IMG/VR virus record: IMGVR_UViG_3300044797_000098
Span: 1-64,000 of that record
Strand: one strand, 5' to 3'
Length of the DNA: 64,000 nucleotides
Of this stretch, positions 6 through 60,534 are shown piece by piece (position 1 is the first letter of the stretch; each line of letters opens with the position of its first letter). The notes under the pieces were generated by a model. It did not search any database. It saw only the letters and a program-made list of their open reading frames with translations, and was not told where the DNA came from. The position numbers and the translations under genes were made by a program.

Positions 6-1190
6 TTACCCCGACATAAATGTTCGGGGCTTGTTGCTCGTCCTGCGTTTAGCAGGATGTTGTTTTTGAACGGCAACAATAGGCTCATTGACAAGAGCCC
101 AAGATAGAACGGTTGTTATACCGTTCAAAAGATTGATTGCGGATACTGCACGGTTTTTGATATTGATTGAGGCATTGACGTCTGCGTTTGTGGCGAAGCC
201 ACATTGCAGGCAAAGAAAATCGCTCTGCGATTTTCGATTACCCTTTTCACAATGTCCGCAGTTGCTACACGTTCTGCTTGTATTACGAGGATCAACGAGT
301 GCTACTGGAACACCTGCTATCTGCGCCTTGTAAAGTATGAACTGCATCAGTTGATTGAATGCCCACTTACCGTGCTTGTCTCTATCCTTTTTTCTAACCG
401 TTTTCTTGAAAGATTGCAAATCTTCGATTGCAATTCCAACATTGTGCCTTTTCGCTTCCGAGACAACCCGTTTGCTTATGATATGATTCGTGTTTCTCTT
501 GAATTTTCCTTCCTTGTTAGATATTCGTTTGAGATGACGTTTTGCGGACTTCGTTCCGCGAGACTGTAATCGTTTGCGTAAATTATGATATCGTTGTCTG
601 ACTGTTTCTACTTCGTTGCCTACGAACTTGACACCGTTGTCCAGCGTGGCTAAATTGACAATACCAGAATCCATACCGATAAAATCGGTTGGCAGATATT
701 GTTCTGCTTCTGGAACTTCGACTACGGCTTGTAGAAAAAAATTACCATTATTGAAAACTAATGTAGCACCGTTTCTAATCTTTCTATTGTATAAGTTTGC
801 ATATGTTCCGAAAGCGATTGGTATCTTTTTCAATCTTCTATTGATAGAAGATATGGAAATCATATCAAGGTTCTTGCCGAAGGCAAGAACCCTTGCATCA
901 AAATCGATTGATGAGTGTTTTTGGAAACGATGTTGAACGGTCTTGTCGTTTTTATATGTTGCTGAAACGCGTGCTATTGCACGGATTACAAATTGAGATG
1001 GTAGAGATGGAAACTGTTTGCGAACTTGATGATAGATTGCCTTTTGCAGTTTGAATTTAGAAAAACAACGATTAGCAAAAGCATATTCCGAGATCGAATT
1101 ACAAGTAGAATTGAACACATACATCGTGTTCAATAACGATTGTTTTTCGTTTGCAGAAACTATTAGTTTGACTGGAACGGTTAGCAACAT
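6..1190 (-). CDS. tnpB: TnpB RNA-guided nuclease (IS200/IS605-type), copy 1
   Basis: 394 aa; RuvC motifs GMDSG, IEDL, NADVNA; CxxC-CxxC zinc finger (CSNCG...CLQCG); right-end hairpin overlaps the 3' end of the gene. Confidence 0.93.
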   Translation of the reverse strand: MLLTVPVKLIVSANEKQSLLNTMYVFNSTCNSISEYAFANRCFSKFKLQKAIYHQVRKQFPSLPSQFVIRAIARVSATYKNDKTVQHRFQKHSSIDFDARVLAFGKNLDMISISSINRRLKKIPIAFGTYANLYNRKIRNGATLVFNNGNFFLQAVVEVPEAEQYLPTDFIGMDSGIVNLATLDNGVKFVGNEVETVRQRYHNLRKRLQSRGTKSAKRHLKRISNKEGKFKRNTNHIISKRVVSEAKRHNVGIAIEDLQSFKKTVRKKDRDKHGKWAFNQLMQFILYKAQIAGVPVALVDPRNTSRTCSNCGHCEKGNRKSQSDFLCLQCGFATNADVNASINIKNRAVSAINLLNGITTVLSWALVNEPIVAVQKQHPAKRRTSNKPRTFMSG

Positions 1191-1488: not shown

Positions 1489-1562
1489 TGGAACCGGCGA
1501 GCAACGATCTCGCAACCTATCGGTTAAAAGCCGATTGCTACTGCCAATTGAGCTACGGTTCC
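1489..1562 (-). tRNA. tRNA-Lys(UUU), atypical D and T arms, no encoded CCA
   Basis: Acceptor stem GGAACCG/CGGTTCC; anticodon stem ATCGG/CCGAT with loop CTTTTAA; T stem GCGAG/CTCGC. Confidence 0.85.
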
Positions 1563-2599: not shown

Positions 2600-3844
2600 C
2601 GCAGGGATACCCTTGGCTTCAGTCAAGGGATGAACTGCGCTCCGTGAATTATTTTTGTGTTGCATACGATTTTTCTCAACTTTCTACTACTAATGATATA
2701 TATACTTACGATGCGAAGAACTTTTTCTTTCTATATGCTTGCTCCAAACGGATTTTTAGACTATCTAAAAACTTGTTCGGATATTTTTACTCGTCATGTG
2801 GAATGGGCATTTTCTAATAAATCTACTAATAAGGTTCAAGCACACAAAGACTTGTATCAAGTTATTCGTTCCGAATATCCAAACATACCTTCCAACATTT
2901 TACAAGCAACACGAGATCAAGCATTGGAAGCAGTTAGAAGATTGAAGTTCAAAATCAAACCTAAAAAGAAACCACATTCAGCGGTTAGATACGATGCCAG
3001 AACAATTACTCTTCGCGGTAATCTTTTGACTTTTTCGTGGTCAGGCAAACGAATTAGAACACTAATCAATTTACCACAACATTTTCAACAATACAAAAAT
3101 TGGAAGATGCAATCAGGAACTATTGGTTATGACAAGGTCAAAAAGCAACTAAAAATTAGCCTTATTTTTGAGGCACCAGATACGATACCTATTCAAAACT
3201 CAACAAGAATAGTAGGCGTAGATCGCGGATTATATAATATCGTCTCGTTGTCAGACGGTCAATTGTATAATGCGCGAACGGTAAGAAAAAAGAAACGCGA
3301 GTTTCTTTATACGAAACGACAACTCCAAGCAAAAGGCACTCGATCTGCTAAACGAAAACTAAAAGCAAGATCAGGTCGAGAAAAGCGGTTCAGCACGGAT
3401 ACCAATCATGTAATTAGTAAATGGTTAGTAAATCAGTCATATGATACATTCGTTTTTGAAGACTTGAAAAACATTAGCAAGCAACGCAAAGGCAAGGTAT
3501 TGAATGGATGGCTTTCTAACTGGACATTTTTTCAATTAGAACAATTCGTTTTGTATAAAGCATCAACATTAGGCAAACAGGTTGTCAAGGTAGATGCAAG
3601 ATATACAAGTCAAAAATGCTCTAATTGTGGAATTGTTGAAAAATCTAATCGCAATAAATCAAGATATTGTTGCAGTAAATGCGGATATATAGAACACGCT
3701 GATATCAATGCTGCAAAAAATATCAAGATGAATTATACTCTCTCGTTAGCAGTAATGAATAACGAGCAGGCACCAGTCAATGTGCCATATGTGTCGATAG
3801 CAATATTAGATACAAGCCCTTGCCTTTAGGCAAGGGTACTTGAC
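2600..3844 (+). mobile_element. Non-autonomous IS200/IS605-like element carrying tnpB only
   Basis: Left hairpin CGCAGGGATACCCTTGG...CAAGGGATGAACTGCG at 2600-2639; right end CCCTTGCC-TTTA-GGCAAGGG-TACTTGAC ending at 3844. Confidence 0.75.
2711..3829 (+). CDS. tnpB: TnpB RNA-guided nuclease, copy 2 (start reassigned to MRRTFSF at 2711)
   Basis: RuvC motifs GVDRG, FEDL, HADINA; zinc finger CSNCG...CSKCG; N-terminus parallels copy 3 (MQRTISI). Confidence 0.93.
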   Translation: MRRTFSFYMLAPNGFLDYLKTCSDIFTRHVEWAFSNKSTNKVQAHKDLYQVIRSEYPNIPSNILQATRDQALEAVRRLKFKIKPKKKPHSAVRYDARTITLRGNLLTFSWSGKRIRTLINLPQHFQQYKNWKMQSGTIGYDKVKKQLKISLIFEAPDTIPIQNSTRIVGVDRGLYNIVSLSDGQLYNARTVRKKKREFLYTKRQLQAKGTRSAKRKLKARSGREKRFSTDTNHVISKWLVNQSYDTFVFEDLKNISKQRKGKVLNGWLSNWTFFQLEQFVLYKASTLGKQVVKVDARYTSQKCSNCGIVEKSNRNKSRYCCSKCGYIEHADINAAKNIKMNYTLSLAVMNNEQAPVNVPYVSIAILDTSPCL

Positions 3845-12079: not shown

Positions 12080-12129
12080 TTCTCCATTTCGTCTCAATCT
12101 TTAGGGTGTTGAGCAACCGTTATACCTAC

Positions 12130-12158
12130 AATATACTCACACTATACAATTTTGTCAA
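12130..12158 (-). promoter_or_regulatory. Sigma70-like promoter inside the array, upstream of the last repeat
   Basis: TTGACA (12153-12158)-17 nt-TATATT (12130-12135). Confidence 0.7.
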
Positions 12159-12164
12159 GACTCA

Positions 12165-12225
12165 CGTCATATAAACTTATGAGCCTGAGTTTCGATCTTA
12201 TAGGGCGTCGAACAACCATTACTAC
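12165..12225 (-). ncRNA. crRNA-like regulatory RNA (variant repeat plus a guide against the cas12 promoter)
   Basis: Variant repeat keeps its stem through compensatory changes; the first 11 guide nt TCAGGCTCATA equal 14465-14475, next to a TTG PAM. Confidence 0.8.
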
Positions 12226-12484
12226 TCCTCTCAATCTTTAGGGTGTTGAGCAACCATTACTACATGATGGCATTCATCTTTTAGTTGATGGAGGATTGTC
12301 AGTCTCAATCTTTAGGGTGTTGAGCAACCATTACTACCTGATAGTTCTCACTGCATCGGAGCCGGATAATGCCGTCTCAATCTTTAGGGTGTTGAGCAAC
12401 CATTACTACCAACTTGATAACAAACGTATCTATGGAAAAGAACGATTAGTCTCAATCTTTAGGGTGTTGAGCAACCATTACTAC

Positions 12485-12605
12485 CAGTGTCGAAAATTAC
12501 TTCGTGATTTCAACCACTTACGATAGCGTTTTCGAGCACCTCTTCCTGACCCGTCTCTTGGCAACTATACTAACCCAAGAGACGGGTTTGTCAAGTGGCA
12601 CCTAA
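12485..12605 (-). promoter_or_regulatory. CRISPR leader with promoter and inverted repeats
   Basis: TTGACA-16 nt-TAGTAT (12567-12594); perfect 13-bp inverted repeat 12549-12561/12575-12587; 7-bp inverted repeat TCGAAAA/TTTTCGA at 12490-12535. Confidence 0.65.
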
Positions 12606-14402
12606 CTATGCGACTTCCATAAGGGTTTCCTCATTGCGAGCACCCTCGGGGGTTTTGGCGTCGCCTGACCGCTCGCGCTCAAGTCCGCGGTCAAGGATAT
12701 TGTTTGATGCATTCTCATCTCGATCATGTTCAACACCACAACCTTGACAAAAATACTTCAACATACCTTTGATATCATCATTGTAATAATGACATATTCC
12801 GCATTCTTTTGAAGTGCCACGAGCATCAACTTCGATATATCCTTCTGTCTTTCCTCTGCTACGCAATGCGTTCTTACACGCATTACGAAACTCACTTGGT
12901 GCAGTCAGTTGCCTATTAGTGCTTCCAGCATTACCTCGTGCAAGGTTAGACAGATTGATGTCCTCGAAAACAATCGAACCGTATTGATCAGCAAGTTTTG
13001 CTGCCAACTTACGATACTCTTCGTTTCGATATCCAACTCCGCGATTGCGTTGCGAAGAAGCCCACTGCCATAGATGGTGATCATGATATCTCCATCCCGC
13101 AATACCAGTTCCTTTTGTTAGTGTTTTCGTTTCTTTATTCCACGAACCACTAATACCATAAATCTCTTCATCTCCCGCAAAACGATTGGTTGACCATTGT
13201 TTCACCAATCTTGCAAGACGACCTTGCGATCTCCACTTATCCAAGTGTTCACATTCTTTCGTGAGCCATTCGGGCAAGTTTTCTTTTCCAGTCATCCATT
13301 CAACTAATGATTTACGAACAGCATCGAACTCCTTATCTCGAATGCTTTCGATTTCGTTAGCCTTTGATAGTGCTGCAATGACACTTGATGGGACACGAAT
13401 ATCCCATTCCTTATTATCAGTTCCTTTACCATATCCAATGCGAACCGATCCGTCTTGCATATCGCGCCAACCAAGATCAATACCAACGCACGATTGATTG
13501 TTGTGTGCAATTGTATTTTGATTGTCATTGAACGTAATAGACACCGTCCAATGTTCTCGTGCTCCAATCTTATTGCAACATACCTGTACAACCTGAATAA
13601 CGCTTCCAGTAGGAATATCACGATGATATACCATTGGAAACTCTGCCCAGATAGGCTTACGATCATTGTCGGTTCCAATACGGAGACGGAACAATCGCAA
13701 GTCTTTCTTACCAACCTTACGCATCGTTCCATCTACCTTTACAATTGGAGCAGGCATAGGAATGATCCGAACCATCTTGCTTGATGCTTCAATGCCAATG
13801 ACCTTATCAATAGGTTCATTGGGTTGAAACTGCTGAATACCAACACGACCTTCACCAAGATATGAACGGAAACGAGGATCATTCGGTTCAACACCATCAT
13901 ACAATGGCATCTTACGAGTTTTCTGAAACGCATCCTCAATCAACATATACGTTCCATACCACGGAGCAATATCACTCTTGCGAACCTCTGCAATCTTTAG
14001 GTTCGCTTGCTGATCAATAGCAGTTCGTTTTGCTTTGATATCCTCATTGCTACGAAGCAATCTGCGTGCTTCAATAAGTTTCGAGTTGATTTCTTTGCGA
14101 GCCTTCTTTGCATCCCTCAGTTCTTGCTTCATCTCATCGGTTGCAACGCGAGTGCGAGCATCCGCATTAGCTCGTTTGTTCCTCTTGTCGAACGCAATAA
14201 CCTTATCATCCGCTTCCTTTACTGCGACTTCCAGTTCAGGAATATCACCTGCTTGTCGTTCAATGGTTCGGATTTCATTTCTCCTCCATCGTTCAATCTC
14301 AATAAGTTTGTTTTGGTAATTGTGTCCCTTTCTAATCTGCTCCATAACAAGATCATGGTTCAGTGTGGGTGCCAGAAGTCCTAACTTGAAGGTGCGTGTC
14401 AT
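12606..14402 (-). CDS. cas12m: Compact type V CRISPR effector, Cas12m-like (subtype V-M / V-U1)
   Basis: 598 aa next to the array; long coiled-coil REC insertion, WYGTY and GEGRVGIQ segments, RuvC-I GIDLGWR, KWRSQGRL, RuvC-II VFEDINL, TAPSEFR, zinc finger, RuvC-III DRDENA; collinear with the Cas12m proteins as I recall them. Confidence 0.8.
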   Translation of the reverse strand: MTRTFKLGLLAPTLNHDLVMEQIRKGHNYQNKLIEIERWRRNEIRTIERQAGDIPELEVAVKEADDKVIAFDKRNKRANADARTRVATDEMKQELRDAKKARKEINSKLIEARRLLRSNEDIKAKRTAIDQQANLKIAEVRKSDIAPWYGTYMLIEDAFQKTRKMPLYDGVEPNDPRFRSYLGEGRVGIQQFQPNEPIDKVIGIEASSKMVRIIPMPAPIVKVDGTMRKVGKKDLRLFRLRIGTDNDRKPIWAEFPMVYHRDIPTGSVIQVVQVCCNKIGAREHWTVSITFNDNQNTIAHNNQSCVGIDLGWRDMQDGSVRIGYGKGTDNKEWDIRVPSSVIAALSKANEIESIRDKEFDAVRKSLVEWMTGKENLPEWLTKECEHLDKWRSQGRLARLVKQWSTNRFAGDEEIYGISGSWNKETKTLTKGTGIAGWRYHDHHLWQWASSQRNRGVGYRNEEYRKLAAKLADQYGSIVFEDINLSNLARGNAGSTNRQLTAPSEFRNACKNALRSRGKTEGYIEVDARGTSKECGICHYYNDDIKGMLKYFCQGCGVEHDRDENASNNILDRGLERERSGDAKTPEGARNEETLMEVA

Positions 14403-14449: not shown

Positions 14450-14478
14450 AATATAATCACGCCCTATGAGCCTGACAA
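14450..14478 (-). promoter_or_regulatory. Sigma70-like promoter of the cas12 gene, overlapped by the regulatory target
   Basis: TTGTCA (14473-14478)-17 nt-TATATT (14450-14455). Confidence 0.75.
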
Positions 14479-18801: not shown

Positions 18802-19134
18802 ATGAGATACAATAAGCCTCCTATCCCTAAGGAAGCATTGGTAGTTTTCGAGTTATGTTATGCATTACGATCCAATAACATTCAATTCGATCTTGAATAC
18901 TCAGATCGAGTTGTTGATTGGAATGTAGGAAACCATAAGGTAAGATTTGATATCGTCATAATCAAAAACGATACAATCGTTTGCATAATTGAATGTAAGC
19001 GTATTAAACAACTCACATCAGGAAGAAACAATCAGATCGTTAAGTATTCAACCTTTGGTGTTCCGGTGTTGTTGTGTAGGGGGATGAATGACATTCCTGC
19101 TACGGTTGCGAAGGTTCAATCATACCTTCGTTAG
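18802..19134 (+). CDS. PD-(D/E)xK endonuclease (DUF559/Vsr-like)
   Basis: RFDIVI...IIECK motif; oriented opposite to all neighbours. Confidence 0.6.
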   Translation: MRYNKPPIPKEALVVFELCYALRSNNIQFDLEYSDRVVDWNVGNHKVRFDIVIIKNDTIVCIIECKRIKQLTSGRNNQIVKYSTFGVPVLLCRGMNDIPATVAKVQSYLR

Positions 19135-24368: not shown

Positions 24369-26732
24369 TTACTGACTGATCTTTCTTTGGTATTCCATAT
24401 GGTCTTGTTCTTCCAACGATCGGAAGCGCATAATACCTTGCGTAATTGCTTTCCGTTTCTCTGTGTTAGTTCCACTAAGGATCTTCTTCAAGCTACGTGC
24501 AGGTAATCCTGTTATAGTTCTGCACGCATGACTATTGTCCTGATCATCAAGTCCACTTACCAGACTATCAAAATCAACGTCTCCTGTCATTAGGAAGTAT
24601 AGTGGAACTGCTCTCAGCGCGATCTTTGCTCTCTCTTTCTTGGCTTCTAGTGATAGCTCTTCTTTGTCTTTGGCAGGGTCTTTATCTCCGCCATTGCTAT
24701 CGGTATTACCATCAGTATTACCATCAGCGCTATCATCTTCGTCATCACTATCATCGCTATTACCACTGTCATCTAGTCGCCTAGAGTTCTTGCCGTTCTT
24801 CACGTCGGACTTGTTTACTTCGATACCCTTGATCTTAGATCCATTCAGTTCGATATCATCAAGTCCTTCAACTAAGTCATCAAGGTTTATAGGAAGAAGA
24901 TCCTCGAACAATGATTGAAGTCCAACAAGACTGGTTGATCTGCCGAATCCCTCTTCCAGTTTAGCGATGAGTTCGTCGGCATTCATTGCTTTGAATTCCG
25001 TTCCCTCATAGCATAGAACGTTGAACACCTTCAACATCTCATTCAGAATTGGCTTCGGGTTAGCACCGTTAGCCGTAGCCTGAGCGAGCGTATACAAGTG
25101 TTCAAGCGTGCGATTGGGATTGAAGTCGAATACATAGCATTCGTGCTTCATTCCAACCCATGGTGTTTGTCCTCGGAATATAAGCTGAAAATACAACTGA
25201 GCGGATGTCATATCCGACAGAATAAATACCGATCCCCATTCGGGGATCGATACTCCGTGCCCTAGCTTTCCACATGAAAGAGTAATCGTTCCAATGTGTT
25301 TCTTGTTGCGACCACTCTCTACGTCTGCAATTCTGCTCTTGACGAGTTGAACAGTATCAGGTCCTTCATCACCATTAGCACCTGCTGCAATGATGATATC
25401 ATAATGCTTATAAACTCGGTGTTTTTTAAGCATAGCTGCGGTAAGTTCCACGGCTTTCACATTGCGAGGTAGATACCATAGAGCATGCCGAAGATTGATT
25501 TCGGAATACCTAGAGTGCTTTGAGTATGGCATCTCCAACTCATGAGACATCATATCAAGAAAAGATTTGACGGACTTTTCATTGATGAATGAGGGAACTC
25601 CTTTTACCTTTTCTTCAATCGAAAAGAGTTTTGTGAATGTGAAGCCCTCGTCTTCGGTGAAGACGTCGGCATCCTCATACAACTCTGGAGAGAGAAGAAT
25701 GGTATGTAATGTCATAGGGCAGAGCCAATAGTATTGCCCATCTTTCTCAGCATTAGCTTGTCCGAGTCGAGCAAGCTCTTCTGCGCGAACATATTGCTCG
25801 TTTAGATATGACCAAGAGAACATTGCGTCTGGTTCGAAACGCTCTTCCAATAGAGCACGGAAGGGCGTTCCACTAAGATTGAGAATGTGCTTACAGTTAA
25901 GCTTAGCAAGCGCCTCTTTCGTGTTCGGAGTATCGAATGCGAGATGACACTCATCTTTGATGAGAAGATCGAATACCATGTTTGGGAAGTTCTTGAACTT
26001 AGGCTTCAATAATCCTTCTTTGGTTAGACGAGCAAGATCCTGCAATGATGCGAATATGATTGTTCGCTTGTTAGGATCGACAACGATCGGATCACTAACC
26101 TTACTTGCATCAATGAAGTTATCCTTGCCGAAGTCAAAATCGACATGATCCATTGCGTCAATCCAAGATTGTTTCGTATCAGTAGGACGACCAGTCAAAA
26201 TAAGAACGAGACCGAAATCCATTCTCATAATGAGCTGGTATGCAGCGTGCGTCTTACCAAAACGCATCTTACAATCCCAGAGAAACTCTCTCGTAAGATT
26301 TTCATCCTTAGACATGAAGGCAATGGTAATCGCTAGGCATTCGTCTTGTTCAGAACGAAGAAGAAACGATAGCAACTTACGATTACCATGATTGGCTGCA
26401 TTGAAGTAGAGAGTGATCTGTTGGACAAGGAAGTTATAGTCAGACACTAGTAGAGAGATTACTTCTCTGCCCCTACCACGATTGGCTCCGAACTTCTTTG
26501 CGAACGTAGAACATAGATGCTTACGGACACCTGCATCACCAAGATTAGTAGGGAAGAAGCAATGTTCAATATCACCTGGACAATGACGCTGATGTTCTCC
26601 GAGACGTTGATCGCGAGCACCAGCATTGTTATCAGACAATCCAATCTTGAAGTTGACACGATCAGTTGGAAGAAGATTGGTTATGTTGGGCCCAGTAAGA
26701 TACACACCGCGAGTATGAATAGGAGCAGCCAT
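24369..26732 (-). CDS. Restriction-type enzyme: N-terminal GIY-YIG/T5orf172-like nuclease plus SF2 helicase
   Basis: KIGLS...RL.EH N-terminal motif; Walker A CKMRFGKT, DECH, LSGTPF, and motif VI QLIFRGQTP. Confidence 0.8.
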   Translation of the reverse strand: MAAPIHTRGVYLTGPNITNLLPTDRVNFKIGLSDNNAGARDQRLGEHQRHCPGDIEHCFFPTNLGDAGVRKHLCSTFAKKFGANRGRGREVISLLVSDYNFLVQQITLYFNAANHGNRKLLSFLLRSEQDECLAITIAFMSKDENLTREFLWDCKMRFGKTHAAYQLIMRMDFGLVLILTGRPTDTKQSWIDAMDHVDFDFGKDNFIDASKVSDPIVVDPNKRTIIFASLQDLARLTKEGLLKPKFKNFPNMVFDLLIKDECHLAFDTPNTKEALAKLNCKHILNLSGTPFRALLEERFEPDAMFSWSYLNEQYVRAEELARLGQANAEKDGQYYWLCPMTLHTILLSPELYEDADVFTEDEGFTFTKLFSIEEKVKGVPSFINEKSVKSFLDMMSHELEMPYSKHSRYSEINLRHALWYLPRNVKAVELTAAMLKKHRVYKHYDIIIAAGANGDEGPDTVQLVKSRIADVESGRNKKHIGTITLSCGKLGHGVSIPEWGSVFILSDMTSAQLYFQLIFRGQTPWVGMKHECYVFDFNPNRTLEHLYTLAQATANGANPKPILNEMLKVFNVLCYEGTEFKAMNADELIAKLEEGFGRSTSLVGLQSLFEDLLPINLDDLVEGLDDIELNGSKIKGIEVNKSDVKNGKNSRRLDDSGNSDDSDDEDDSADGNTDGNTDSNGGDKDPAKDKEELSLEAKKERAKIALRAVPLYFLMTGDVDFDSLVSGLDDQDNSHACRTITGLPARSLKKILSGTNTEKRKAITQGIMRFRSLEEQDHMEYQRKISQ

Positions 26733-26750
26733 TGTGATTGTCTTTCGTTG

Positions 26751-28283
26751 TTATACGTCGTCTAGATTGATTACATTGGCAAGACGATCGAAGTCTCTCG
26801 ACGTCTTTGGTTGTCGTTGCTTCTTTTCTGCTTTGGCTTTGGGGGCTTTGGCAGGCTTGTTTCCCTTACTGCGAAACACGATATAATTTCGTGTAGTTTT
26901 TTCCACATGTTCAATCTCTTCCTTAGAGAGATCAAACATCGCATAGAGATCTTCGTTCGAATACGAACGAGTGAAGTCGAGATACGGAACGAATTTGAAT
27001 GTCTTGGATGAAGTATTCTTTACCTTCAGAAGTGAAACAAGATACTGTACGAGATAGGTATTGATGAATGCTTCCGCGTTCTTTACCTCTTCATTGGTAT
27101 CAAAAACACCAATCACGAGATACGTTTCACTAACGATGTTGCCAGGCTTCACAATGAATGTCTTGCCGGTCGAACCACGTTCCGCTCCATACGCCTTTGG
27201 AATACAGAGTTTCCACTTATCAATAGTATCTAAGTTTTTGGCGATATGTTTCTTGTTAACAAGCTTAGTCATCTCTCCACCGCCACTACCGCCTTTAACA
27301 TGGCATACATATGACGTTTCAAAATCGTCTGACCAATCCGAATAATTGCTTCGCAATCCATATGGATTGGAGAGTAGCATCTTAGATTCAAAAAACGTAT
27401 CGCACTTTGCTACCACCTTATCACGAATTGTTACTCCCACAACAAGAATAACCTCCTGTCCCTCAAGATTCATATCTTTACCATTGATCTTTACGACATG
27501 ATCGTTCTTGGAAGCTTCCCACATAAAATACATCACACCACCAGGAATAAGCACACCAGGAAACCAGTCTTCCGATTTTTCCGTAGAAACTATGTTCGTA
27601 AGCTTCTTACACGAGAGCATCATTTTCAAAAATGATGACGTGCTTTTTCCATTACCAGTCATCCACGGAGCAGGAATAACCATACTAAGATAGCTTGGAT
27701 TACACTCAGTTGCTTTTTGCACGAAGTCAGGATACAATGCACCAGCCGACGCACCTCCTCCACCAGCACCATCACTCAATTGGTAAGGCGGATTGCCAAC
27801 AATACAATCAAACTTCACATACGTTTCTTTCCCATTAGCTTCCTTCTTCACCATAACTTCTCCGTTCTTACCTAGTCTTGCTTTCAGGAAGTCTCGCGTC
27901 TGAACATTCCCTTTCAGCGTCAGAAACCCCCTCATATTATTCCACACTTTGCCTAGATAGTTCCTACGAACAATTAGCTCGCAAGCAGGCGTAGGAGCGA
28001 ATGAATAAATCATCTCATTGACAATCCAGTTTCGTCTCTCTTCGTAATCTGGAATAGCAACAATCAATCCCATCATCAATCGTCGAAACAACTCCAACTC
28101 AAACTCACCGTTCTTGCTAACAGGCACAAGCCACTTCAATCGAGGATTACTCCACACATCTTTAGGAAACGACTCACACATATTGAAAACCAACGGTGCG
28201 GGCGTCTTCACCATCTGATTCTCATTCTTCTTTTGAACGGGATTAGGAAGTCGGGCATGAAACGCAGCAGTCATTGTAGTCAA
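26751..28283 (-). CDS. N6-adenine DNA methyltransferase, Eco57I-like, with target-recognition domain
   Basis: FDCIVGNPPYQ catalytic motif IV; its SAM-binding motif I looks degenerate (WLVPVSKNGEF). Confidence 0.85.
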   Translation of the reverse strand: MTTMTAAFHARLPNPVQKKNENQMVKTPAPLVFNMCESFPKDVWSNPRLKWLVPVSKNGEFELELFRRLMMGLIVAIPDYEERRNWIVNEMIYSFAPTPACELIVRRNYLGKVWNNMRGFLTLKGNVQTRDFLKARLGKNGEVMVKKEANGKETYVKFDCIVGNPPYQLSDGAGGGGASAGALYPDFVQKATECNPSYLSMVIPAPWMTGNGKSTSSFLKMMLSCKKLTNIVSTEKSEDWFPGVLIPGGVMYFMWEASKNDHVVKINGKDMNLEGQEVILVVGVTIRDKVVAKCDTFFESKMLLSNPYGLRSNYSDWSDDFETSYVCHVKGGSGGGEMTKLVNKKHIAKNLDTIDKWKLCIPKAYGAERGSTGKTFIVKPGNIVSETYLVIGVFDTNEEVKNAEAFINTYLVQYLVSLLKVKNTSSKTFKFVPYLDFTRSYSNEDLYAMFDLSKEEIEHVEKTTRNYIVFRSKGNKPAKAPKAKAEKKQRQPKTSRDFDRLANVINLDDV

Positions 28284-28855
28284 TCCTTTTTCAGGTGCAG
28301 GAGTTCTTCATACAAACGCTTGTTAGTCCTACCGTTAGGACATTCTTCGTTGTTGTCTATGGCGGATAGTATCTTGTCGATCTTGGTTAGAGCTTCAGTC
28401 TTATTCCTATTAGGAAGACTATCGAAGTGCTTCCACTTTAGATTGTCTTTTAATGTATCCTTGGTCGGGCGTATATTGTTCTCGACAATACACGCAACAC
28501 GTTTTCTTATAGCGAACCAGGCAGCTCCTTTATACCCGTGTTGTATAGCATATGGAATAACAACGTTGGCATAGATACGCATATGACATTCACGAACATT
28601 GTCGATCATAATGTCGACACCGAACGTCGTATTGAGTGCAGCCATTAGATCATGCCCGTATGCCAACTTACGCCGTAAAATACCGAGAATGAATTGACCA
28701 TTACCGCACGTAGGTTCGAGCCAGTTTTTCTCCTCTTGCCATGCATCTTCTGGAAACTGATTGAGCATCTGCTCAACAAGGAAGTCTGGCGTAAATACTT
28801 CACCAACATCCTTTACTCGTTCCTTAGATTTGATTAGTGATACCGACATATACAA
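28280..28855 (-). CDS. SAM-binding DNA methyltransferase subunit
   Basis: KSKERVK..GEVFTP and LEPTCGNGQF motifs; no NPPY; 4-nt overlap with the next gene. Confidence 0.8.
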   Translation of the reverse strand: MYMSVSLIKSKERVKDVGEVFTPDFLVEQMLNQFPEDAWQEEKNWLEPTCGNGQFILGILRRKLAYGHDLMAALNTTFGVDIMIDNVRECHMRIYANVVIPYAIQHGYKGAAWFAIRKRVACIVENNIRPTKDTLKDNLKWKHFDSLPNRNKTEALTKIDKILSAIDNNEECPNGRTNKRLYEELLHLKKD

Positions 28856-36155: not shown

Positions 36156-37364
36156 ATGCAACGAACGATCTCTATCAAAATTGACGCACCAGCAGAGTTT
36201 TTAGATTACCTAAAAGCTTGCAACGAGCTATACAGCAGGTATGTTGAATGGTGTTTCGAGACCAAGAGCTACAATAAGAATAAATCTCATACCGAGCTAT
36301 ATGAAAAGTTTCGTCAGGAGTTTCCAAGTATCAATTCTGCCACCATTCAGTGTATTAGAGATAATGCACTTGAAAGCGTCAAGGCATTGAAATTCAAATT
36401 CAAGCCGAAAAAGAAGCCACATTCTCATATTCGTTTTGATAAGAGAACGATCGCTCTTCGAGGTGATCAACTATCGTTTGCATGGTCAGGTGATCGTATC
36501 AAACAGATCATAAAGATACCAGAGTTTTTCAAAAAACGATATGGATCTTGGAAGTTTCAGGCAGCAACAATAGGCTATAATAAGCATAAGAAGCAATTCG
36601 TTGCTAATCTGATTTTTCAATCAACTGCTCCGCAGGAGCTTCGCTCTTCTGCTCCGCAGGAGCTTCGCTCTTCTGCTCCGCAGGAGCTTCGCTCTTCTTC
36701 ACCTGAAAAGAAAGGTGATCGTGTAGTTGGTATCGATCGTGGACTGTATAACATAGTGTCTCTATCTGATGGTTTCAAGTATGCTTCCAATCAGGTCAGA
36801 AAAGTGAAACGAGAAGTCTTGTTTCTCAAAAAGCAACTTCAAACAAAAGGCACCCATAGTGCTAAACGCAAATTGAAAGCGTTGTCTTGCTATGAGAAGC
36901 GGTTTAGTTTGAATGTCAATCATATCATCAGTAAATTGTTAGTTTCGTTGCCATACGATATTTTTGTTCTCGAAGACTTGAAAGGTATTCGTAAGCAAAA
37001 ATCAAAAGGCAAACGACTAAACAAGTGGCTTGCTAACTGGTCATTTTGGCAATTAGAGGCTCTTCTGGGATATAAGGCAGAGATATTTTGCAAGCAAATT
37101 GTCAAAGTCGATGCTCGATATACCAGTCAAAAGTGCTGCAATTGCGGTCAAGTAGAAAAAGCCAATCGTGATGGCTCACATTACCACTGTGAGCGTTGTG
37201 GATTTAGGTGTCATTCGGATACGAATGCTGCTAAAAATATCCGCAATAACTATCTCATCTCTGCTGCTGAAAAACAGAAGGCAGAGCAGGCTATGTGTCA
37301 ATTAGCCGAATGCTTCGTATCGAAAGATACAGAAACAAGCCCCGTTGCTTTTAGCACGGGGTAA
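36156..37364 (+). CDS. tnpB: TnpB RNA-guided nuclease, copy 3, with a 3x APQELRSS insertion
   Basis: GIDRG, LEDL, HSDTNA RuvC motifs and zinc finger; right end CAAGCCCCGTTGCTTTTAGCACGGGGTAATTGA. Confidence 0.93.
   Translation: MQRTISIKIDAPAEFLDYLKACNELYSRYVEWCFETKSYNKNKSHTELYEKFRQEFPSINSATIQCIRDNALESVKALKFKFKPKKKPHSHIRFDKRTIALRGDQLSFAWSGDRIKQIIKIPEFFKKRYGSWKFQAATIGYNKHKKQFVANLIFQSTAPQELRSSAPQELRSSAPQELRSSSPEKKGDRVVGIDRGLYNIVSLSDGFKYASNQVRKVKREVLFLKKQLQTKGTHSAKRKLKALSCYEKRFSLNVNHIISKLLVSLPYDIFVLEDLKGIRKQKSKGKRLNKWLANWSFWQLEALLGYKAEIFCKQIVKVDARYTSQKCCNCGQVEKANRDGSHYHCERCGFRCHSDTNAAKNIRNNYLISAAEKQKAEQAMCQLAECFVSKDTETSPVAFSTG
36625..36696. repeat. Three tandem copies of the 24-nt hairpin element
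   Basis: (CTGCTCCGCAGGAGCTTCGCTCTT)x3. Confidence 0.95.
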
Positions 37365-47419: not shown

Positions 47420-48470
47420 ATGTAGGGAAAAGACTTAGTATGATCTTGCTGTCTCGGTTTTAAGAAAAACCAATGAGATCATAACGTTGGACGATCATAG
47501 GGTATGCAAAGATTGCGGTGTGATAATGTGGGATAGTGTTGCTTCGGTCTAGGAAGCGTTCGGAGCGCTCGGGATATCTCGGCAAGGGTAGCAGGGGGAA
47601 AACGCTTCCTAGCTGGCACCTAGCGCCAGCAAACGGCAATGCTCGAAGGCAGGGTGCGGGCGCTCGACGTTGGCTGGAATGTAGTTGCTGGTAGGGAGCT
47701 CCGTCAGGATGTAGTACAATGTAGGGAAAGGTGGGTGGTTCCGTTCTTGCAATGATGCACAAGTTATGCCAAGTCGACGGCTCGTTTCTTGCAATAGGTT
47801 CAGGTGGGATAACGGAATACATACGATACAGACTTCCCTACATACTGAACGGTTGGCACTGGCTGAACCGTTGAACGTATAGTGTAGGGTGAGCAGTGTC
47901 GTATGTAGGAGATCAGTGGATGATGTAGTATGATTGTTGCGAGGTCAAGTATAGGTCAAGTGCTTATCACGTATTGGTCAACAACAACTCACTGATAACG
48001 CAATGTAGGATAACAGGAGAGATGTAGCCGTCTCAACACCATTGGATTACCTGAACAAGATGTAGGAGAATAGGGAGAAAGGTAGGTAGAGGTAGGGAGG
48101 AATTACAGCGATACGGTTGGCACGGTTCTTGGGGGTTGGCGGGAAAGGTAGCCAGAGGTGGGATGAATGCTGACAGGGGAAAGGTGGGATGATGTGAGAT
48201 GTTCAGGTGGTGTGATGTAGGGGAGACGGGGAGATGTGGCAGCTTGGTGCCTAGTGTAGGGGGAACGCAGGGCGTATAGCCGGAGTAGCGGGTTGGAAGA
48301 CAATGTATGATATGTAGTGAAAAGAAAGGAAATGTAGTGGAATGTAGAATGATGTAATAGTTGTAAAGAAGTGGAATGAAATGGAGGGAAAGGTGGGAGA
48401 CGGTGGGAGGAATGGAGGGGATGTGGTGAGGTATCGCGTAAGGTGTGGCGGTGTGGGGTAATGTGGGCCT
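47420..48470. other. Purine/G-skewed non-coding tract at the GC-content junction
   Basis: 50 of 60 bases are purines at 48361-48420; 11 co-oriented GTAGG. Confidence 0.7.
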
Positions 48471-48845
48471 CGTTAAATAATAGAACGGTACCAAAACGAA
48501 TCAATACAATACTATCAAACGGTAGCAAACAATATAAAACAAAATAATCTGAATACAACATCAAACAATAGCAACAATTAATAATAACCAATAAAACGGT
48601 TGTAATAAATATAACAACTACATCAATAACAATAGTTTATCTAATCGTTCCTCTGTTATATCCTCTGGCAATAAATAATCAAGAAATACACTAGGCTTGT
48701 CATCATCAGCATATTCAATAAGGGTTGATTTACTATCAATAAACGATGTAATGCAACTATCGAATTCAGCAACTGCGATTGAATCATTATATAATATATC
48801 CTGTACTATATGTAATGGTATATTAGTTAAATATATCTTTATCAA

Positions 48846-57474: not shown

Positions 57475-57812
57475 TGTCTAAAATAGTAGTTCAGGGACGT
57501 GAACCTCATGAAATAAAAGCCATGGAGGAAAAACATAAAAAAGAAGCAGAGGCAAAAAAGAAAACTGCTGCTCCAAAAATAAAATCATATTATGATGTTA
57601 AAGTGGAATGTTTGATTCCGACAACAATGATATATAGAGTATTCGCTGATGATGAACGCGAGGCTATGGAGTTATTTAATAAAATGTCAAAAGAATATAA
57701 AGCACCTACGCAAGTAAAGCCAAATTATTCATTAAAAAAAATAATCAAAGCAACTGTGTATGCGTCTGGTAGTAGTGTAATAAAACTAGTTAAAAACTAT
57801 ATGGTTAGATAA
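57474..57812 (+). CDS. Hypothetical protein
   Basis: Translationally coupled within the operon. Confidence 0.65.
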   Translation: MSKIVVQGREPHEIKAMEEKHKKEAEAKKKTAAPKIKSYYDVKVECLIPTTMIYRVFADDEREAMELFNKMSKEYKAPTQVKPNYSLKKIIKATVYASGSSVIKLVKNYMVR

Positions 57813-58405
57813 TGTCTGGTATAATATATTATATTTGTGATTTAGAAACTAACGGATTAGTTTATAGAAATAATTTCCACGAAATAACTGAACTATCTAT
57901 TCTACGGGCAGATGAACGAGTACAACTATCTAGAAAAATTAAAATCAATCATCCTGAAAATAGTTCCATTGATGCATTACGCATAACCGGAAAAACGATA
58001 GAAGATTTAAAAACAGGAATATCCACACCACAATTAATAAATGATGTTGAGATTTTTTTACATGAGGACGATGCAACGCCTGAACATAGATGTATTGTCG
58101 GGCATAATATTATTAATTTTGATAGGAACTTTTTATTTAGTACTTGGGAAAAGTATGGAAAATTATTTCCAGCTAATTTATGGTTAGATACTATGTTTAT
58201 GGTTAAAAGTATAAATAAAAAAAACGGTGATAAAAAAGCCAAATCAAATTTGAAGGACTCATTAACGAAGTTTGGTATATATAATAATTTTAAATTACAT
58301 TCTGCCAAAGGTGATTCTCAGGCAACATATTTTTTATGGCAAAAATTAATGCAAGAAACTGATCATCTTGAACATTTAAAACGTATTCCACACGAAGAAA
58401 AATAA
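57812..58405 (+). CDS. DEDDh 3'-5' exonuclease (Pol III epsilon-like)
   Basis: DLET, GHN...FD and HSA..D motifs. Confidence 0.88.
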   Translation: MSGIIYYICDLETNGLVYRNNFHEITELSILRADERVQLSRKIKINHPENSSIDALRITGKTIEDLKTGISTPQLINDVEIFLHEDDATPEHRCIVGHNIINFDRNFLFSTWEKYGKLFPANLWLDTMFMVKSINKKNGDKKAKSNLKDSLTKFGIYNNFKLHSAKGDSQATYFLWQKLMQETDHLEHLKRIPHEEK

Positions 58406-59022
58406 TGATCAAAAATACAGATATAGAAACGCTCTATAATAAAATAGATGGTCGTATAAATTTAATCGGTAGTTATATTGGTGATCCCGAATTGCTTCCA
58501 AAAATTATTAAAAGTTGCAGATTGAAACCATATTCTATATTTTCCGGGAATCATCAATCAAAAACGGTATTTGAGCACCATTGGGTTGATGAGTTTGGTA
58601 ATTCATTAAAAATAGAAGATAAAACTTTAAAAATCGTAATGAATGACATACAGATAAATAAAAATACTAAGATAAGCACGGATTTGTTTTTCGGTTATTC
58701 TATTGATAGGGTTGCAAAAAATAGTAAATGCGTATTAGTAATAAATGGTGAGTTTTTTGATGAACCGTGTTATTGTGCAGTATTTTATGGTAAGGACGAG
58801 TTTTTACGAAGTTTTTTCTGGTATAAAGAATTAACAAAGATTTCACCTCTCTTATTAGGAATAAATACATTACGAGAGTTTTTTAAAAATATTCATAATT
58901 TAATTAAATCTGATATTGATAAAAATAAAATAGACATGTCAATAAAATTTAATGTCTTAGATTGTATCGTATGCTGGGAACCAGCTGGCTGGAAAGATCA
59001 TATAAAAGGAGAATGCAAATAG
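58405..59022 (+). CDS. Hypothetical protein
   Basis: 205 aa, coupled within the operon. Confidence 0.65.
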   Translation: MIKNTDIETLYNKIDGRINLIGSYIGDPELLPKIIKSCRLKPYSIFSGNHQSKTVFEHHWVDEFGNSLKIEDKTLKIVMNDIQINKNTKISTDLFFGYSIDRVAKNSKCVLVINGEFFDEPCYCAVFYGKDEFLRSFFWYKELTKISPLLLGINTLREFFKNIHNLIKSDIDKNKIDMSIKFNVLDCIVCWEPAGWKDHIKGECK

Positions 59023-59241
59023 ATGGTAGATAAAGATGGCGTATTAGAGTTTGAGGGCACAGTGGAAAACTTAGTTAGAGATAAAGTGTTTGTAAAAATA
59101 AATGATAATTATACTGTTATATGTACCGTATCTGGTAAAATTAGACAAAGCGGAATTAAGTTATTGCCGGGTGATAGAGTACGCGCTGAGGTTAGCGTGT
59201 ATGACACAAGTAAAGGCCGAGTTGTTTATAGAATGAAATGA
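59023..59241 (+). CDS. infA: Translation initiation factor IF-1
   Basis: 72 aa; EFEG.V...F.V......VIC.VSGKIR...I.LLPGDRV..EVS.YD.SKGRVVYR. Confidence 0.93.
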   Translation: MVDKDGVLEFEGTVENLVRDKVFVKINDNYTVICTVSGKIRQSGIKLLPGDRVRAEVSVYDTSKGRVVYRMK

Positions 59242-59248
59242 GGAACAC

Positions 59249-60271: not shown

Positions 60272-60534
60272 AGTTTTTATTTGAAAATTATTTAGTTTGT
60301 TTTCCAGCGGATGTATCATATAAAACATATGACGATAAATATTGCTATGGTATAAAGTTTGCGGACAATAATGATAGTTATGAATTGATACATAACAGAG
60401 AAGTAAATTGGAGTAGGATTTATGTTACAAAAAATAATGTTATTAAAGATATTCCATTTAAAGAATCAGCATTTGGCGTGTTACCCGGCTTTATAATATT
60501 AACATCAATAGAGGAACAGAATGCACGAAAATAA
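60265..60534 (+). CDS. Hypothetical protein
   Basis: Overlaps both neighbours within the operon. Confidence 0.55.
   Translation: MLEFLFENYLVCFPADVSYKTYDDKYCYGIKFADNNDSYELIHNREVNWSRIYVTKNNVIKDIPFKESAFGVLPGFIILTSIEEQNARK

What the first reader, a model, noticed from the sequence alone, without database searches (positions are those of the whole stretch)
12606..14402. Cas12m-like effector with an intact D-E-D RuvC triad and no adaptation genes
Seen in sequence: RuvC-I GIDLGWR, RuvC-II VFEDINL and RuvC-III DRDENA all keep their acidic residues. No cas1, cas2 or cas4 is nearby. Established: the characterised Cas12m proteins (MmCas12m, GoCas12m) have a non-canonical RuvC (His at the first position) and silence DNA rather than cut it. 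Inference: this may be a nuclease-active or ancestral V-M variant of only 598 aa, used by the phage against competitors or the host.
Basis: partly seen in the sequence, partly recalled or inferred. Interest (0 to 1): 0.8.

Follow-up and report, generated by a model that had tools for sequence, protein, structure and literature searches.

The report
Jumbo-phage Cas12m with mini CRISPR array
This is a genuine 598-aa Cas12m (type V-M) CRISPR effector with its own small CRISPR array on a 406-kb phage contig, but its intact D-E-D RuvC motif and missing cas1/cas2/cas4 are normal for this family, whose tested D-E-D members bind DNA without cutting it.

Summary
ORF 12606-14402 (-) encodes 598 aa with RuvC D309/E480/D562 and a CxxC...CxxC zinc finger, and no cas1/2/4 lies nearby. 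The protein is a clear Cas12m: PADLOC Cas12u1 model 2e-86, solved Cas12m structures down to 1e-47, and predicted fold TM 0.78 to Cas12m2 and GoCas12m. It has four 36-nt repeats, three spacers, a divergent fifth repeat, and a promoter-driven lone sixth repeat. Its pseudoknot scaffold covaries across relatives and is homologous to the MsCas12m repeat.

D-E-D is the majority state (150 of 183 nearest cluster representatives) and defines published Cas12m clades 3 and 4. D-E-D Cas12m proteins, including purified MsCas12m, showed no DNA cleavage (Bigelyte 2024). Missing adaptation genes are typical of V-U1/V-M and of phage CRISPR systems. A phage Cas12m with D-E-D was reported in a 2026 preprint, and GenBank virus Rctr197k carries one. 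No protospacers were found.

Verdict: a new member of a known kind, most likely a crRNA-guided DNA binder.

Side lead: the same promoter-plus-solitary-repeat cassette sits in a related phage, inserted into a gene whose 3' end is duplicated.

The parts
12606..14402 (-). cas12m gene, 598 aa. RuvC D309/E480/D562; zinc finger C534/C537/C552/C555; long helical REC insertion (helices at about residues 16-142).
14450..14478 (-). sigma-70-like promoter match (TTGTCA-17-TATATT, 10/12) upstream of cas12m. Consensus match only.
   Evidence: sequence
12550..12594 (-). Leader between the gene and the array. It holds a promoter-like TTGACA-16-TAGTAT (12567-12594) overlapped by a 12-bp inverted repeat or hairpin (12550-12586; -26 kcal/mol, z -4.3).
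12228..12484 (-). CRISPR array proper. Four 36-nt repeats, GTAGTAATGGTTGCTCAACACCCTAAAGATTGAGAC, lie at 12449-12484, 12374-12409, 12302-12337 and 12228-12263 (the last ends in G). Three spacers lie at 12410-12448 (39 nt), 12338-12373 (36 nt) and 12264-12301 (38 nt).
12189..12225 (-). Divergent fifth repeat (37 nt), 2 nt after repeat 4 with no spacer between. All five of its substitutions preserve the two pseudoknot stems (CTCAA/TTGAG becomes TTCGA/TCGAA; U-A becomes U-G).
   Evidence: 42.6 bits
12130..12158 (-). Best sigma-70-like match in the region (TTGACA-17-TATATT, 11/12). The predicted transcription start falls at the first bases of the lone sixth repeat.
   Evidence: sequence
12091..12126 (-). 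Lone sixth repeat (GTATAACGGTTGCTCAACACCCTAAAGATTGAGAC). It is followed directly by the GGAG ribosome-binding site and the start of the next ORF.
   Evidence: 42.4 bits; homologous promoter-plus-repeat cassette in L015-L018
11774..12079 (-). Small ORF of about 100 aa with no family match. Its 5' end is the would-be guide of the lone repeat. The likely start is the ATG at 12079 or 12070.

Best explanation
The locus is a self-contained type V-M (formerly V-U1) CRISPR-Cas12m module carried by a jumbo phage. It consists of cas12m, a short leader with its own promoter, and a mini-array.

Shown by computation: the protein is a full-length Cas12m. The repeats form the Cas12m-type pseudoknot handle that ends in ...GAGAC. 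The array is transcribed in the gene's direction. No tracrRNA-like anti-repeat and no adaptation genes are present. Gene plus array travel together as a two-part module in at least seven related large-phage-like contigs whose flanking genes are unrelated to one another.

Inferred from characterised relatives: Cas12m processes the transcript itself and loads crRNAs of about 50 nt. It then binds PAM-flanked double-stranded DNA tightly enough to block transcription or replication, without cutting it. The conserved D-E-D pocket would most likely serve Mg2+-mediated gripping of the displaced strand, as H-D-D does in Cas12m2, rather than cleavage.

Inferred from the huge-phage literature: the three spacers are aimed at competing mobile elements or host genes, and new spacers are acquired in trans or by recombination.
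For: Family membership:
- PADLOC Cas12u1 model 2e-86, full length.
- PDB phmmer hits: 23vw 'CRISPR-associated DNA-binding protein Cas12m' 1e-47, UnCas12m4a 4e-30, Cas12m2 1e-21, 8pm4 2e-14 (labels 8pm4 a Cas12m-crRNA-target DNA complex, taken here to be GoCas12m).
- AlphaFold model with pLDDT 89.5. Foldseek TM 0.78 to Cas12m2 and GoCas12m, against 0.43 or less for Cas12f, TnpB and other type V effectors.
- Tree: all Cas12m separate from TnpB with 100% support, and the query lies in a 19-member subclade with 100% support.

Array and crRNA:
- define the array.
- Homologous arrays lie directly after the gene in L003, L004, L005, L006, L013 and L014.
- The repeat is homologous to the MsCas12m and Rctr197k repeats.
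- Pseudoknot covariation: 96% of cells paired, 8 of 8 pairs with changes on both sides, 0 of 500 shuffles reach this.
- The repeat model finds no copy on the opposite strand, so there is no anti-repeat.

Binding rather than cutting:
- The closest named relative is MsCas12m (30.5% identity, 4e-52), a D-E-D protein.
- Purified MsCas12m cleaves neither target DNA nor RNA and shows no collateral activity. All four D-E-D variants tested lacked dsDNA cleavage (PMC11013384).
- Converting H-D-D back to D-E-D did not restore cleavage in Cas12m2 (PMC10442227).

Phage context:
- The contig is a 406-kb IMG/VR contig.
- Relatives sit among jumbo-phage-type genes.
- Huge-phage CRISPR systems typically lack Cas1/2/4 and have compact arrays (PMC7162821).
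Against: - No experiment exists for this protein or its 19-member subclade. The nearest tested protein is only about 30% identical.
- The triad is under strong purifying selection: 10 losses over about 53 substitutions per site of tree, and 19 of 19 intact in the subclade. So the pocket does something, and slow nicking, ssDNA cutting or crRNA 3' trimming were not excluded for this clade.
- No protospacer was found for any spacer, so neither a target nor a PAM is known.
- The array is odd: a spacerless repeat 4/repeat 5 junction and a promoter-driven lone repeat.
- The promoters are consensus matches only.
- The contig shows an abrupt GC change at about 48.5 kb. Its integrity as one phage genome is therefore unverified.
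Confidence: 0.68

Rival explanations
1. Nuclease-active Cas12m. In this phage subclade the intact D-E-D RuvC cuts or nicks target DNA, as CasPhi or Cas12f do, so the system destroys competitor or host DNA rather than silencing it.
For: - The triad is intact in 19 of 19 subclade members and under strong purifying selection.
- The three TnpB proteins in the same window, which belong to a nuclease family, share the same triad context.
- Omura et al. note that other Cas12m clades 'could interfere ... through mechanisms distinct'.
- Al-Shayeb et al. read conserved catalytic residues in phage effectors as a sign of function.
- No member of this subclade has been tested.
Against: - Every D-E-D Cas12m tested so far failed to cleave, including purified MsCas12m.
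- Restoring D-E-D in Cas12m2 did not restore cutting.
- The closest solved structure, also D-E-D, was deposited as a 'DNA-binding protein'.
- Zero losses in the subclade is not significantly different from the family-wide loss rate: 2.7 expected, P about 0.07.
Confidence: 0.2
2. Self- or cross-regulatory use. The divergent fifth repeat and the promoter-driven sixth repeat make crRNA-like RNAs whose 'guides' are adjacent phage sequence. Cas12m would then act mainly as a programmable repressor, or as an RNA-binding regulator of the downstream gene. Alternatively, the lone repeat acts as a decoy that titrates Cas12m.
For: - The strongest promoter match lies exactly in front of repeat 6, and repeat 6 directly abuts the next gene's ribosome-binding site.
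- In L006, two spacerless minimal repeats lie 8 nt before the next gene's ATG.
- The substitutions in repeat 5 all preserve the structure.
- crRNA-like regulators and promoter-driven solitary repeats are known (PMC10651486; 10.1101/2024.10.29.618823).
Against: - The genes downstream of the arrays are unrelated between loci, so there is no conserved regulated partner.
- A terminal repeat next to the following gene is expected anyway in a tightly packed phage genome.
- The guides of repeats 5 and 6 have no other match in the window or in IMG/VR.
Confidence: 0.1
3. The gene is a TnpB/IS200-IS605-type transposon nuclease, or a decaying remnant, rather than a CRISPR effector.
For: - The only Pfam hit is the Cas12f1-like TNB domain. 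NCBIfam TnpB models match the C-terminus weakly.
- Three TnpB genes are in the window.
Against: - TnpB model scores are far below their cutoffs: 51 bits against 350-425.
- The protein is full-length, uninterrupted and highly conserved.
- It separates from TnpB with 100% support.
- It has the Cas12m REC insertion and fold.
- It is always followed by a covarying CRISPR array.
Confidence: 0.02

Closest known systems
MsCas12m (Allomeiothermus/Meiothermus silvanus plasmid pMESIL02, WP_013159911; Bigelyte et al. 2024)
   Same: - It is the closest named relative: 30.5% identity, E 4e-52.
- It has a D-E-D triad and lacks adaptation genes.
- It has a downstream array whose repeat, GTAGCAACGCCTAGCTCAG...CTGAGAC, is homologous and folds into the same pseudoknot.
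   Different: - It is plasmid-borne in a bacterium, not phage-borne.
- It is 536 aa, against 598 aa here.
- It lies outside the 41-member clade that holds the query.
- It has been shown experimentally to bind and not cut; this protein is untested.
MmCas12m/Cas12m2 and GoCas12m (PDB 8hhl, 8hio, 8pm4)
   Same: - Same fold and domain order: WED, REC with a coiled-coil insertion, RuvC, and a zinc-finger TNB domain (TM 0.78).
- About 600 aa.
- Single crRNA with a pseudoknot handle ending in A(-2)C(-1).
   Different: - Their RuvC triad is H-D-D; here it is D-E-D.
- Only about 19% identity in the structural alignment.
- They come from actinobacterial plasmids.
MvCas12m of myxophage MV-1 (bioRxiv 10.64898/2026.09.14.751636)
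   Same: - Phage-encoded Cas12m of 610 aa.
- Conserved D-E-D (D305/E463/D555).
- Adjacent array and no cas1/2/4.
- No protospacers found.
   Different: It has eight spacers, against three here, and a different host lineage.
Virus Rctr197k (GenBank KX853510), gene Rctr197k_108 plus annotated CRISPR
   Same: - A large virus (197 kb) with a full-length D-E-D Cas12m homologue: 29% identity, 96% coverage.
- The gene is followed at once by a 1.5-kb CRISPR array with a related repeat ending in CTGAGAC.
   Different: - It is annotated only as 'similar to transposase'.
- It has about 20 repeats.
- It lies outside the query's subclade.
Huge-phage type V systems (CasPhi/Cas12j and V-U variants; Al-Shayeb et al. 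2020)
   Same: A compact single effector, a small array and no Cas1/2/4, on phage genomes above 200 kb.
   Different: CasPhi is a different Cas12 lineage (TM about 0.3) and an active nuclease.
Phage solitary repeat units / RNA anti-CRISPRs (Racr; Camara-Wilpert et al. 2023)
   Same: The lone repeat 6 and its copy in L015-L018 are single CRISPR-like repeats immediately downstream of a promoter.
   Different: - Repeat 6 sits beside its own cas gene and array.
- No type V-M Racr has been described in what I read.
- Function is untested.

Membership tests
Cas12m / CRISPR-Cas type V-M (V-U1) | Full-length sequence similarity to Cas12m (V-U1) effectors | tested here: met
   PADLOC Cas12u1 model 2e-86, residues 2-574 against 3-531 of 533. 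PDB Cas12m chains 1e-47 to 2e-14, end to end. The protein falls within the Cas12m clade, which separates from TnpB with 100% support.
Cas12m / CRISPR-Cas type V-M (V-U1) | Cas12m fold: bilobed, with a coiled-coil REC insertion ('Roof'/REC2), RuvC, and a zinc-finger TNB domain | tested here: met
   AlphaFold model with pLDDT 89.5, long helices at residues 16-142, and CxxC...CxxC at 534-555. Foldseek top hits are Cas12m2 and GoCas12m at TM 0.78, with the next class at 0.43 or less.
Cas12m / CRISPR-Cas type V-M (V-U1) | Adjacent CRISPR array with repeats of about 36 nt that fold into a pseudoknot handle | tested here: met
   The array lies 121 nt after the stop codon. The repeat is homologous to that of MsCas12m. 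Covariation supports both stems.
Cas12m / CRISPR-Cas type V-M (V-U1) | Single crRNA guide, no tracrRNA | tested here: inconclusive
   The repeat covariance model finds no opposite-strand (anti-repeat) copy in the 64 kb at E of 1 or less. No RNA data are available.
Cas12m / CRISPR-Cas type V-M (V-U1) | No adaptation module (cas1/cas2/cas4) in the locus | tested here: met
   for the window. The gene tables of L003-L006, L013 and L014 show none either.
Cas12m / CRISPR-Cas type V-M (V-U1) | PAM-dependent dsDNA binding and silencing without dsDNA cleavage | not testable with these tools
   Needs biochemistry or in vivo assays. No protospacers were found, so not even a PAM can be inferred.
Cas12m clade with non-canonical RuvC (H-D-D, as in Mm/GoCas12m) | His at RuvC-I and Asp at RuvC-II | tested here: not met
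   The triad here is D309/E480/D562. The protein therefore belongs with the published D-E-D clades 3 and 4, not clade 2.
TnpB (IS200/IS605, IS607) | About 400 aa, passing the TnpB family models, and lying within an IS element with an omega-RNA instead of a CRISPR array | tested here: not met
   NCBIfam TnpB models score 44-51 bits, against cutoffs of 100-425. The protein is 598 aa with a REC insertion, is followed by a CRISPR array, and falls in a clade separate from TnpB.
Cas12f (type V-F) | Cas12f fold and size (400-550 aa), tracrRNA-dependent | tested here: not met
   Only the shared TNB domain matches. Foldseek TM to Cas12f is 0.41 or less. No anti-repeat was found.
Solitary repeat unit / RNA anti-CRISPR (for repeat 6 and the L015-L018 copy) | [quoted passage not shown] | tested here: inconclusive
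   Promoter plus single repeat is met for both copies. Repeat 6 lies next to cas12m, so 'not associated' fails for it. For L015-L018, tblastn finds no cas12m in the fetched stretches, and no homologue above 60% identity is in the databases. The full contigs could not be read. Inhibitory activity cannot be tested here.

The most novel reading that the evidence does not exclude
The promoter-driven solitary repeat (repeat 6) may be a mobile guide-RNA cassette that works with Cas12m in trans during conflicts between related jumbo phages.

A related phage (L015-L018) shows no detectable cas12m in the stretches that could be read. It carries the same promoter-plus-repeat unit, inserted into a small nuclease-like gene. 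A replacement 3' end keeps that gene intact, and the displaced original 3' end becomes the 'guide'.

The cassette could be the first RNA anti-CRISPR aimed at a phage-borne type V-M system. Alternatively it could be a TnpB-like homing or marker-exclusion element whose spread would require the conserved D-E-D RuvC to cut unoccupied alleles.
Probability: 0.12. Interest if true: 0.8.

Novelty: new member of a known kind. Interest (0 to 1): 0.3.

Why it matters
The headline claim, a Cas12m that is unusual because it keeps D-E-D and lacks adaptation genes, does not stand. Both traits are the rule in the published D-E-D clades, and phage-borne examples are already on record. The locus adds one well-supported member.

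It also defines a coherent D-E-D subclade of 19 sequences, all from metagenomes. Every member whose genomic context I examined lies on a large phage-like contig. The family itself is much larger than published surveys suggest: 1,502 clusters at 50% identity, against 134 variants in Bigelyte et al.

Practical value is modest. It is another compact candidate DNA binder whose repeat and handle are now defined. It would also be a suitable test case for the open question of why non-cutting Cas12m proteins keep a perfect catalytic triad.

The solitary-repeat cassette shared between related phages is the only element that could lead somewhere new.

Tried and rejected
Protospacer searches, all negative:
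- The array against GenBank phages gave only chance hits, E 0.1-6.
- Each spacer against the window matched only itself.
- All 25 spacers and guides against all fetched loci matched only themselves.
- 20-mers of spacers 1-3 and of the repeat 5 and repeat 6 guides in IMG/VR matched only the source contig.
- A 22-mer of spacer 2 in GTDB genomes gave nothing.
- Exact-seed scans would miss mismatched targets.

Other searches that gave nothing:
- The homologue search in GTDB genomes found none.
- Megablast of 12 kb around the gene against GenBank phages found no match.
- Rfam found no CRISPR-DR or other family at the locus, only one tRNA at 1489-1562.

Analyses that did not discriminate:
- Thermodynamic folding of single repeats gives no signal (z about 0), so the structure rests on covariation.
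- I tested whether the subclade's 19 of 19 D-E-D is special. It is not significant: 2.7 losses expected, P about 0.07.
- The genes downstream of the arrays are not homologous between loci. I therefore dropped the idea of a conserved regulated partner gene.

Steps that failed:
- I could not extend the related-phage contigs to look for cas12m. One protein was not on record, and the other was found only on contigs of about 1-1.6 kb.
- Wu et al. 2022 (Mol Cell) is not held.
- No paper was found for the PDB entries 23vw and 23vu.
- The DNA of P0002's contig was unavailable.
Full report
OBSERVATION.

The ORF at 12606-14402 (- strand) is real and encodes 598 aa.
A CxxC...CxxC zinc finger lies at 534-555.
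- The public gene call for this contig starts 19 codons later (579 aa, P0001). The longer form is better supported, because G8 and P12 are at least 90% conserved among 47 homologues and residues 6-19 align to a solved Cas12m.
- The window is the first 64 kb of IMGVR_UViG_3300044797_000098, a 406,470-bp viral contig, in the same orientation.
- No Cas1, Cas2 or Cas4 family was hit by 20 neighbouring ORFs within about 10 kb on either side, nor by the 37 ORFs of at least 150 aa in the window. Only 25 of the 36 matched PADLOC families were displayed, and the rest of the contig was not seen.

WHAT THE PROTEIN IS.

Pfam sees only the Cas12f1-like TNB domain, and NCBIfam TnpB models match the C-terminus far below their cutoffs. 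Dedicated resources are unambiguous:
- The PADLOC Cas12u1 (V-U1) model matches end to end at 2e-86.
- phmmer against PDB sequences gives full-length hits to 23vw 'CRISPR-associated DNA-binding protein Cas12m' (1e-47), UnCas12m4a (4e-30), Cas12m2 (1e-21) and 8pm4, taken here to be GoCas12m (2e-14).
- An AlphaFold model built on 47 homologues has mean pLDDT 89.5. Its best structural matches are Cas12m2 and GoCas12m at TM 0.78. Cas12f, TnpB, CasPhi and the others score 0.43 or less.
- I built a maximum-likelihood tree of the query, 46 metagenomic homologues, six named references and the window's three TnpB proteins. The references were fetched from annotated plasmids and phages. All Cas12m separate from TnpB with 100% support, and the query falls in a 19-member subclade with 100% support.

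The protein is a Cas12m.

THE ARRAY THE FINDING LEFT OUT.

A CRISPR array begins 121 nt after the stop codon, on the same strand.
- It has four 36-nt repeats (GTAGTAATGGTTGCTCAACACCCTAAAGATTGAGAC) separated by spacers of 39, 36 and 38 nt.
- A fifth, divergent repeat starts 2 nt after the fourth, with no spacer between them.
- A sixth repeat lies 63 nt further on, directly behind the best sigma-70-like match in the region (TTGACA-17-TATATT, 11/12). It directly precedes the ribosome-binding site of the next ORF.
- The other top promoter matches lie upstream of cas12m and in the leader. The leader match is overlapped by a strong 12-bp hairpin (-26 kcal/mol, z -4.3).
- Every relative whose downstream DNA could be read has a homologous array in the same place: L004 (8 repeats), L005 (14), L013 (9), L014 (9), L006 (two spacerless minimal repeats) and L003 (first repeat at the contig end).
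- The repeats of the experimentally studied MsCas12m locus and of virus Rctr197k belong to the same repeat family.
- Across 17 distinct repeat variants, a two-stem pseudoknot is 96% paired. All eight pairs show changes on both sides. None of 500 shuffles reaches this, and pairing falls to 23-47% when the partners are slid.
- The handle ends in ...GAGAC, matching the A(-2)C(-1) arrangement described for Cas12m2.
- A covariance model of the repeat finds only these six copies in the window, all on the - strand, so there is no anti-repeat.
- The flanking genes differ completely between loci. Gene plus array is therefore a self-contained mobile module.

THE TRIAD IN CONTEXT.

- Omura et al. 2023 summarise four Cas12m clades. 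Clades 3 and 4 are D-E-D with some NED and DND variants. They also report that converting H-D-D to D-E-D in Cas12m2 did not restore cleavage.
- Bigelyte et al. 2024 chose eight variants, four of them D-E-D, and detected no dsDNA cleavage for any. Purified D-E-D MsCas12m cleaved neither target DNA nor RNA and showed no collateral activity. The D274A mutant still processed pre-crRNA.
- MsCas12m is the closest named relative of the window protein (30.5% identity, 4e-52).
- In my own data D-E-D is the majority state: 37 of 47 homologues, and 150 of 183 of the nearest representatives from an exhaustive search. That search found 1,502 clusters at 50% identity with E of 1e-30 or better.
- Losses (NED, NND, NAD, DEE, DRH, HDD, NDD, DKD, NTD) are scattered outside the query's subclade. 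Parsimony needs at least 10 changes over 41.5 substitutions per site. There are none within the subclade's 11.2 units. At the outside rate only 2.7 would be expected, so P(0) is about 0.07.
- The triad is thus strongly conserved family-wide, and the pocket clearly has a function. That conservation cannot separate catalysis from the Mg2+-mediated gripping of the non-target strand shown for Cas12m2.

PHAGE CONTEXT AND PRIOR REPORTS.

- Relatives sit among jumbo-phage-type genes such as NAMPT, NUDIX, a tRNA synthetase, DNA ligase, PNKP/RNA ligase and Acb5, on contigs up to 238 kb.
- Al-Shayeb et al. 2020 already reported new type V-U variants in huge phages. [quoted passage not shown]
- A 2024 review (PMC11656645) states that V-M is enriched on plasmids and is encoded by some prophages.
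- A September 2026 preprint describes MvCas12m from a myxophage: 610 aa, D305/E463/D555, an array, no cas1/2/4 and no protospacers. The authors call it the first phage Cas12m.
- GenBank virus Rctr197k carries a full-length D-E-D homologue followed by an annotated CRISPR array. It is labelled only 'similar to transposase'.
- V-U1 systems typically lack adaptation genes.

TARGETS.

None of the three spacers, nor the sequences following repeats 5 and 6, matches anything beyond the source contig. I searched GenBank phages, the window, all fetched loci, IMG/VR and (for spacer 2) GTDB genomes. Indirect signs that relatives' arrays are aimed at foreign DNA:
- The L004 spacers are about 62% GC while that locus is 43% GC.
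- L005 carries two near-identical spacers, as if taken from two variants of one target.

'Against competitors or the host' remains a reasonable but untested inference.

MECHANISM (best estimate).

The cas12m promoter and the leader promoter drive the effector and the pre-crRNA. Cas12m would process the transcript and load pseudoknot-handled crRNAs. It would then bind PAM-flanked dsDNA and block transcription or replication of the target without cutting it. Membership, array, handle and module structure are shown by computation. Processing, binding and non-cleavage are inferred from relatives that are about 20-30% identical. I put about 0.68 on this, about 0.2 on a catalytically active variant, and about 0.1 on a mainly regulatory or decoy role for the odd repeats.

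AN UNEXPECTED SIDE OBSERVATION.

The one metagenome scan with the repeat core returned four contigs (L015-L018) from a related phage. They are syntenic with window 14.7-30.8 kb at 70-93% nucleotide identity.
- Each contig carries exactly one repeat. It is preceded by the same promoter-like element as the window's repeat 6, with 85% identity over the 73-nt unit.
- The unit sits at a different locus and on the opposite strand.
- It lies directly after a complete homologue of the window's small PD-(D/E)XK-like gene (18802-19134). It is followed by a second, diverged copy of that gene's last 75 nt or so. In places this copy resembles the window allele more than the local intact copy does.
- tblastn finds no cas12m in the fetched stretches. 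No homologue above 60% identity exists in the protein databases. The full contigs could not be read.
- A promoter-driven solitary repeat without a cas gene fits the published description of viral solitary repeat units, some of which act as RNA anti-CRISPRs.
- The duplicated gene end also recalls homing-type insertion, where the adjacent sequence becomes the guide.

This is a lead, not a finding.

VERDICT.

The argument for novelty, that D-E-D plus no adaptation genes implies an unusual, active or ancestral variant, does not hold. This is a new member of a known kind, of modest interest.

Noticed in passing
L015:3746-3815, L016:3093-3330, L017, L018 (compare window 12089-12159 and 18802-19134): A related phage carries a single promoter-plus-repeat cassette homologous to the window's repeat 6 unit. 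It is inserted right after a complete homologue of the window's small PD-(D/E)XK-like gene and is followed by a diverged duplicate of that gene's last 75 nt or so. No cas12m is visible in the fetched stretches. It could be an RNA anti-CRISPR or a homing-type guide cassette.
   Followed up: partly
window 12189-12263 (- strand): The divergent fifth repeat starts 2 nt after the fourth with no spacer. Its five substitutions all preserve the pseudoknot (two compensatory pairs plus one U-A to U-G change). That argues it is a selected variant rather than a decaying terminal repeat.
   Followed up: partly
L006:2038-2115: A 49%-identical Cas12m is followed by two abutting 31-nt minimal repeats with no spacer at all. 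The next gene's ATG lies 8 nt after the second repeat.
   Followed up: no
L005:10113-11104 and L004:9848-10402: The L005 array mixes two repeat variants that differ by a compensatory pair (GGCA/TGCC against GGTA/TACC). It also holds two near-identical spacers. The L004 spacers are about 62% GC in a 43% GC locus, which suggests GC-rich foreign targets.
   Followed up: no
window 12550-12594 (- strand): A 12-bp perfect inverted repeat (hairpin of -26 kcal/mol, z -4.3) overlaps the -10 of the promoter-like site in the array leader. It could be an operator, or a terminator without a U-tract.
   Followed up: no
window 47900-48700: GC falls abruptly from about 0.49 to about 0.27 at about 48.5 kb. Just before the break lies a 500-nt purine-rich stretch full of GATGTAG / GGTGGGA-like motifs (GC skew up to +0.63). 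This may be a genome terminus, a module boundary or a chimeric assembly joint. It bears on whether the 406-kb contig is a single phage genome.
   Followed up: partly
window 6-1190 (-), 2657-3829 (+), 36156-37364 (+); tRNA at 1489-1562 (-): Three TnpB-type (IS200/IS605 OrfB) genes with intact D-E-D triads lie in the same 64 kb. One tRNA gene sits between the first two.
   Followed up: no
L008 (GenBank KX853510, 110803-114219): Virus Rctr197k has a full-length D-E-D Cas12m homologue, annotated only as 'similar to transposase', next to an annotated 1.5-kb CRISPR array. A 2026 preprint claims the first phage-encoded Cas12m.
   Followed up: partly
protein searches: The Cas12m-like family is far larger than published surveys indicate. 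There are 1,502 cluster representatives at 50% identity with E of 1e-30 or better, mostly full-length, against 134 variants in Bigelyte 2024. D-E-D is found in 82% of the nearest 183.
   Followed up: partly
window 24369-28855 (-): A helicase-like 787-aa ORF is followed by two methyltransferase-like ORFs that match type II and type IIG restriction-modification models.
   Followed up: no
window 57812-61141 (+): The low-GC part of the window encodes a DEDDh/RNase T-like exonuclease, an IMPDH/GMP-reductase-family protein and ThyX. These are nucleotide-metabolism genes typical of large phages.
   Followed up: no
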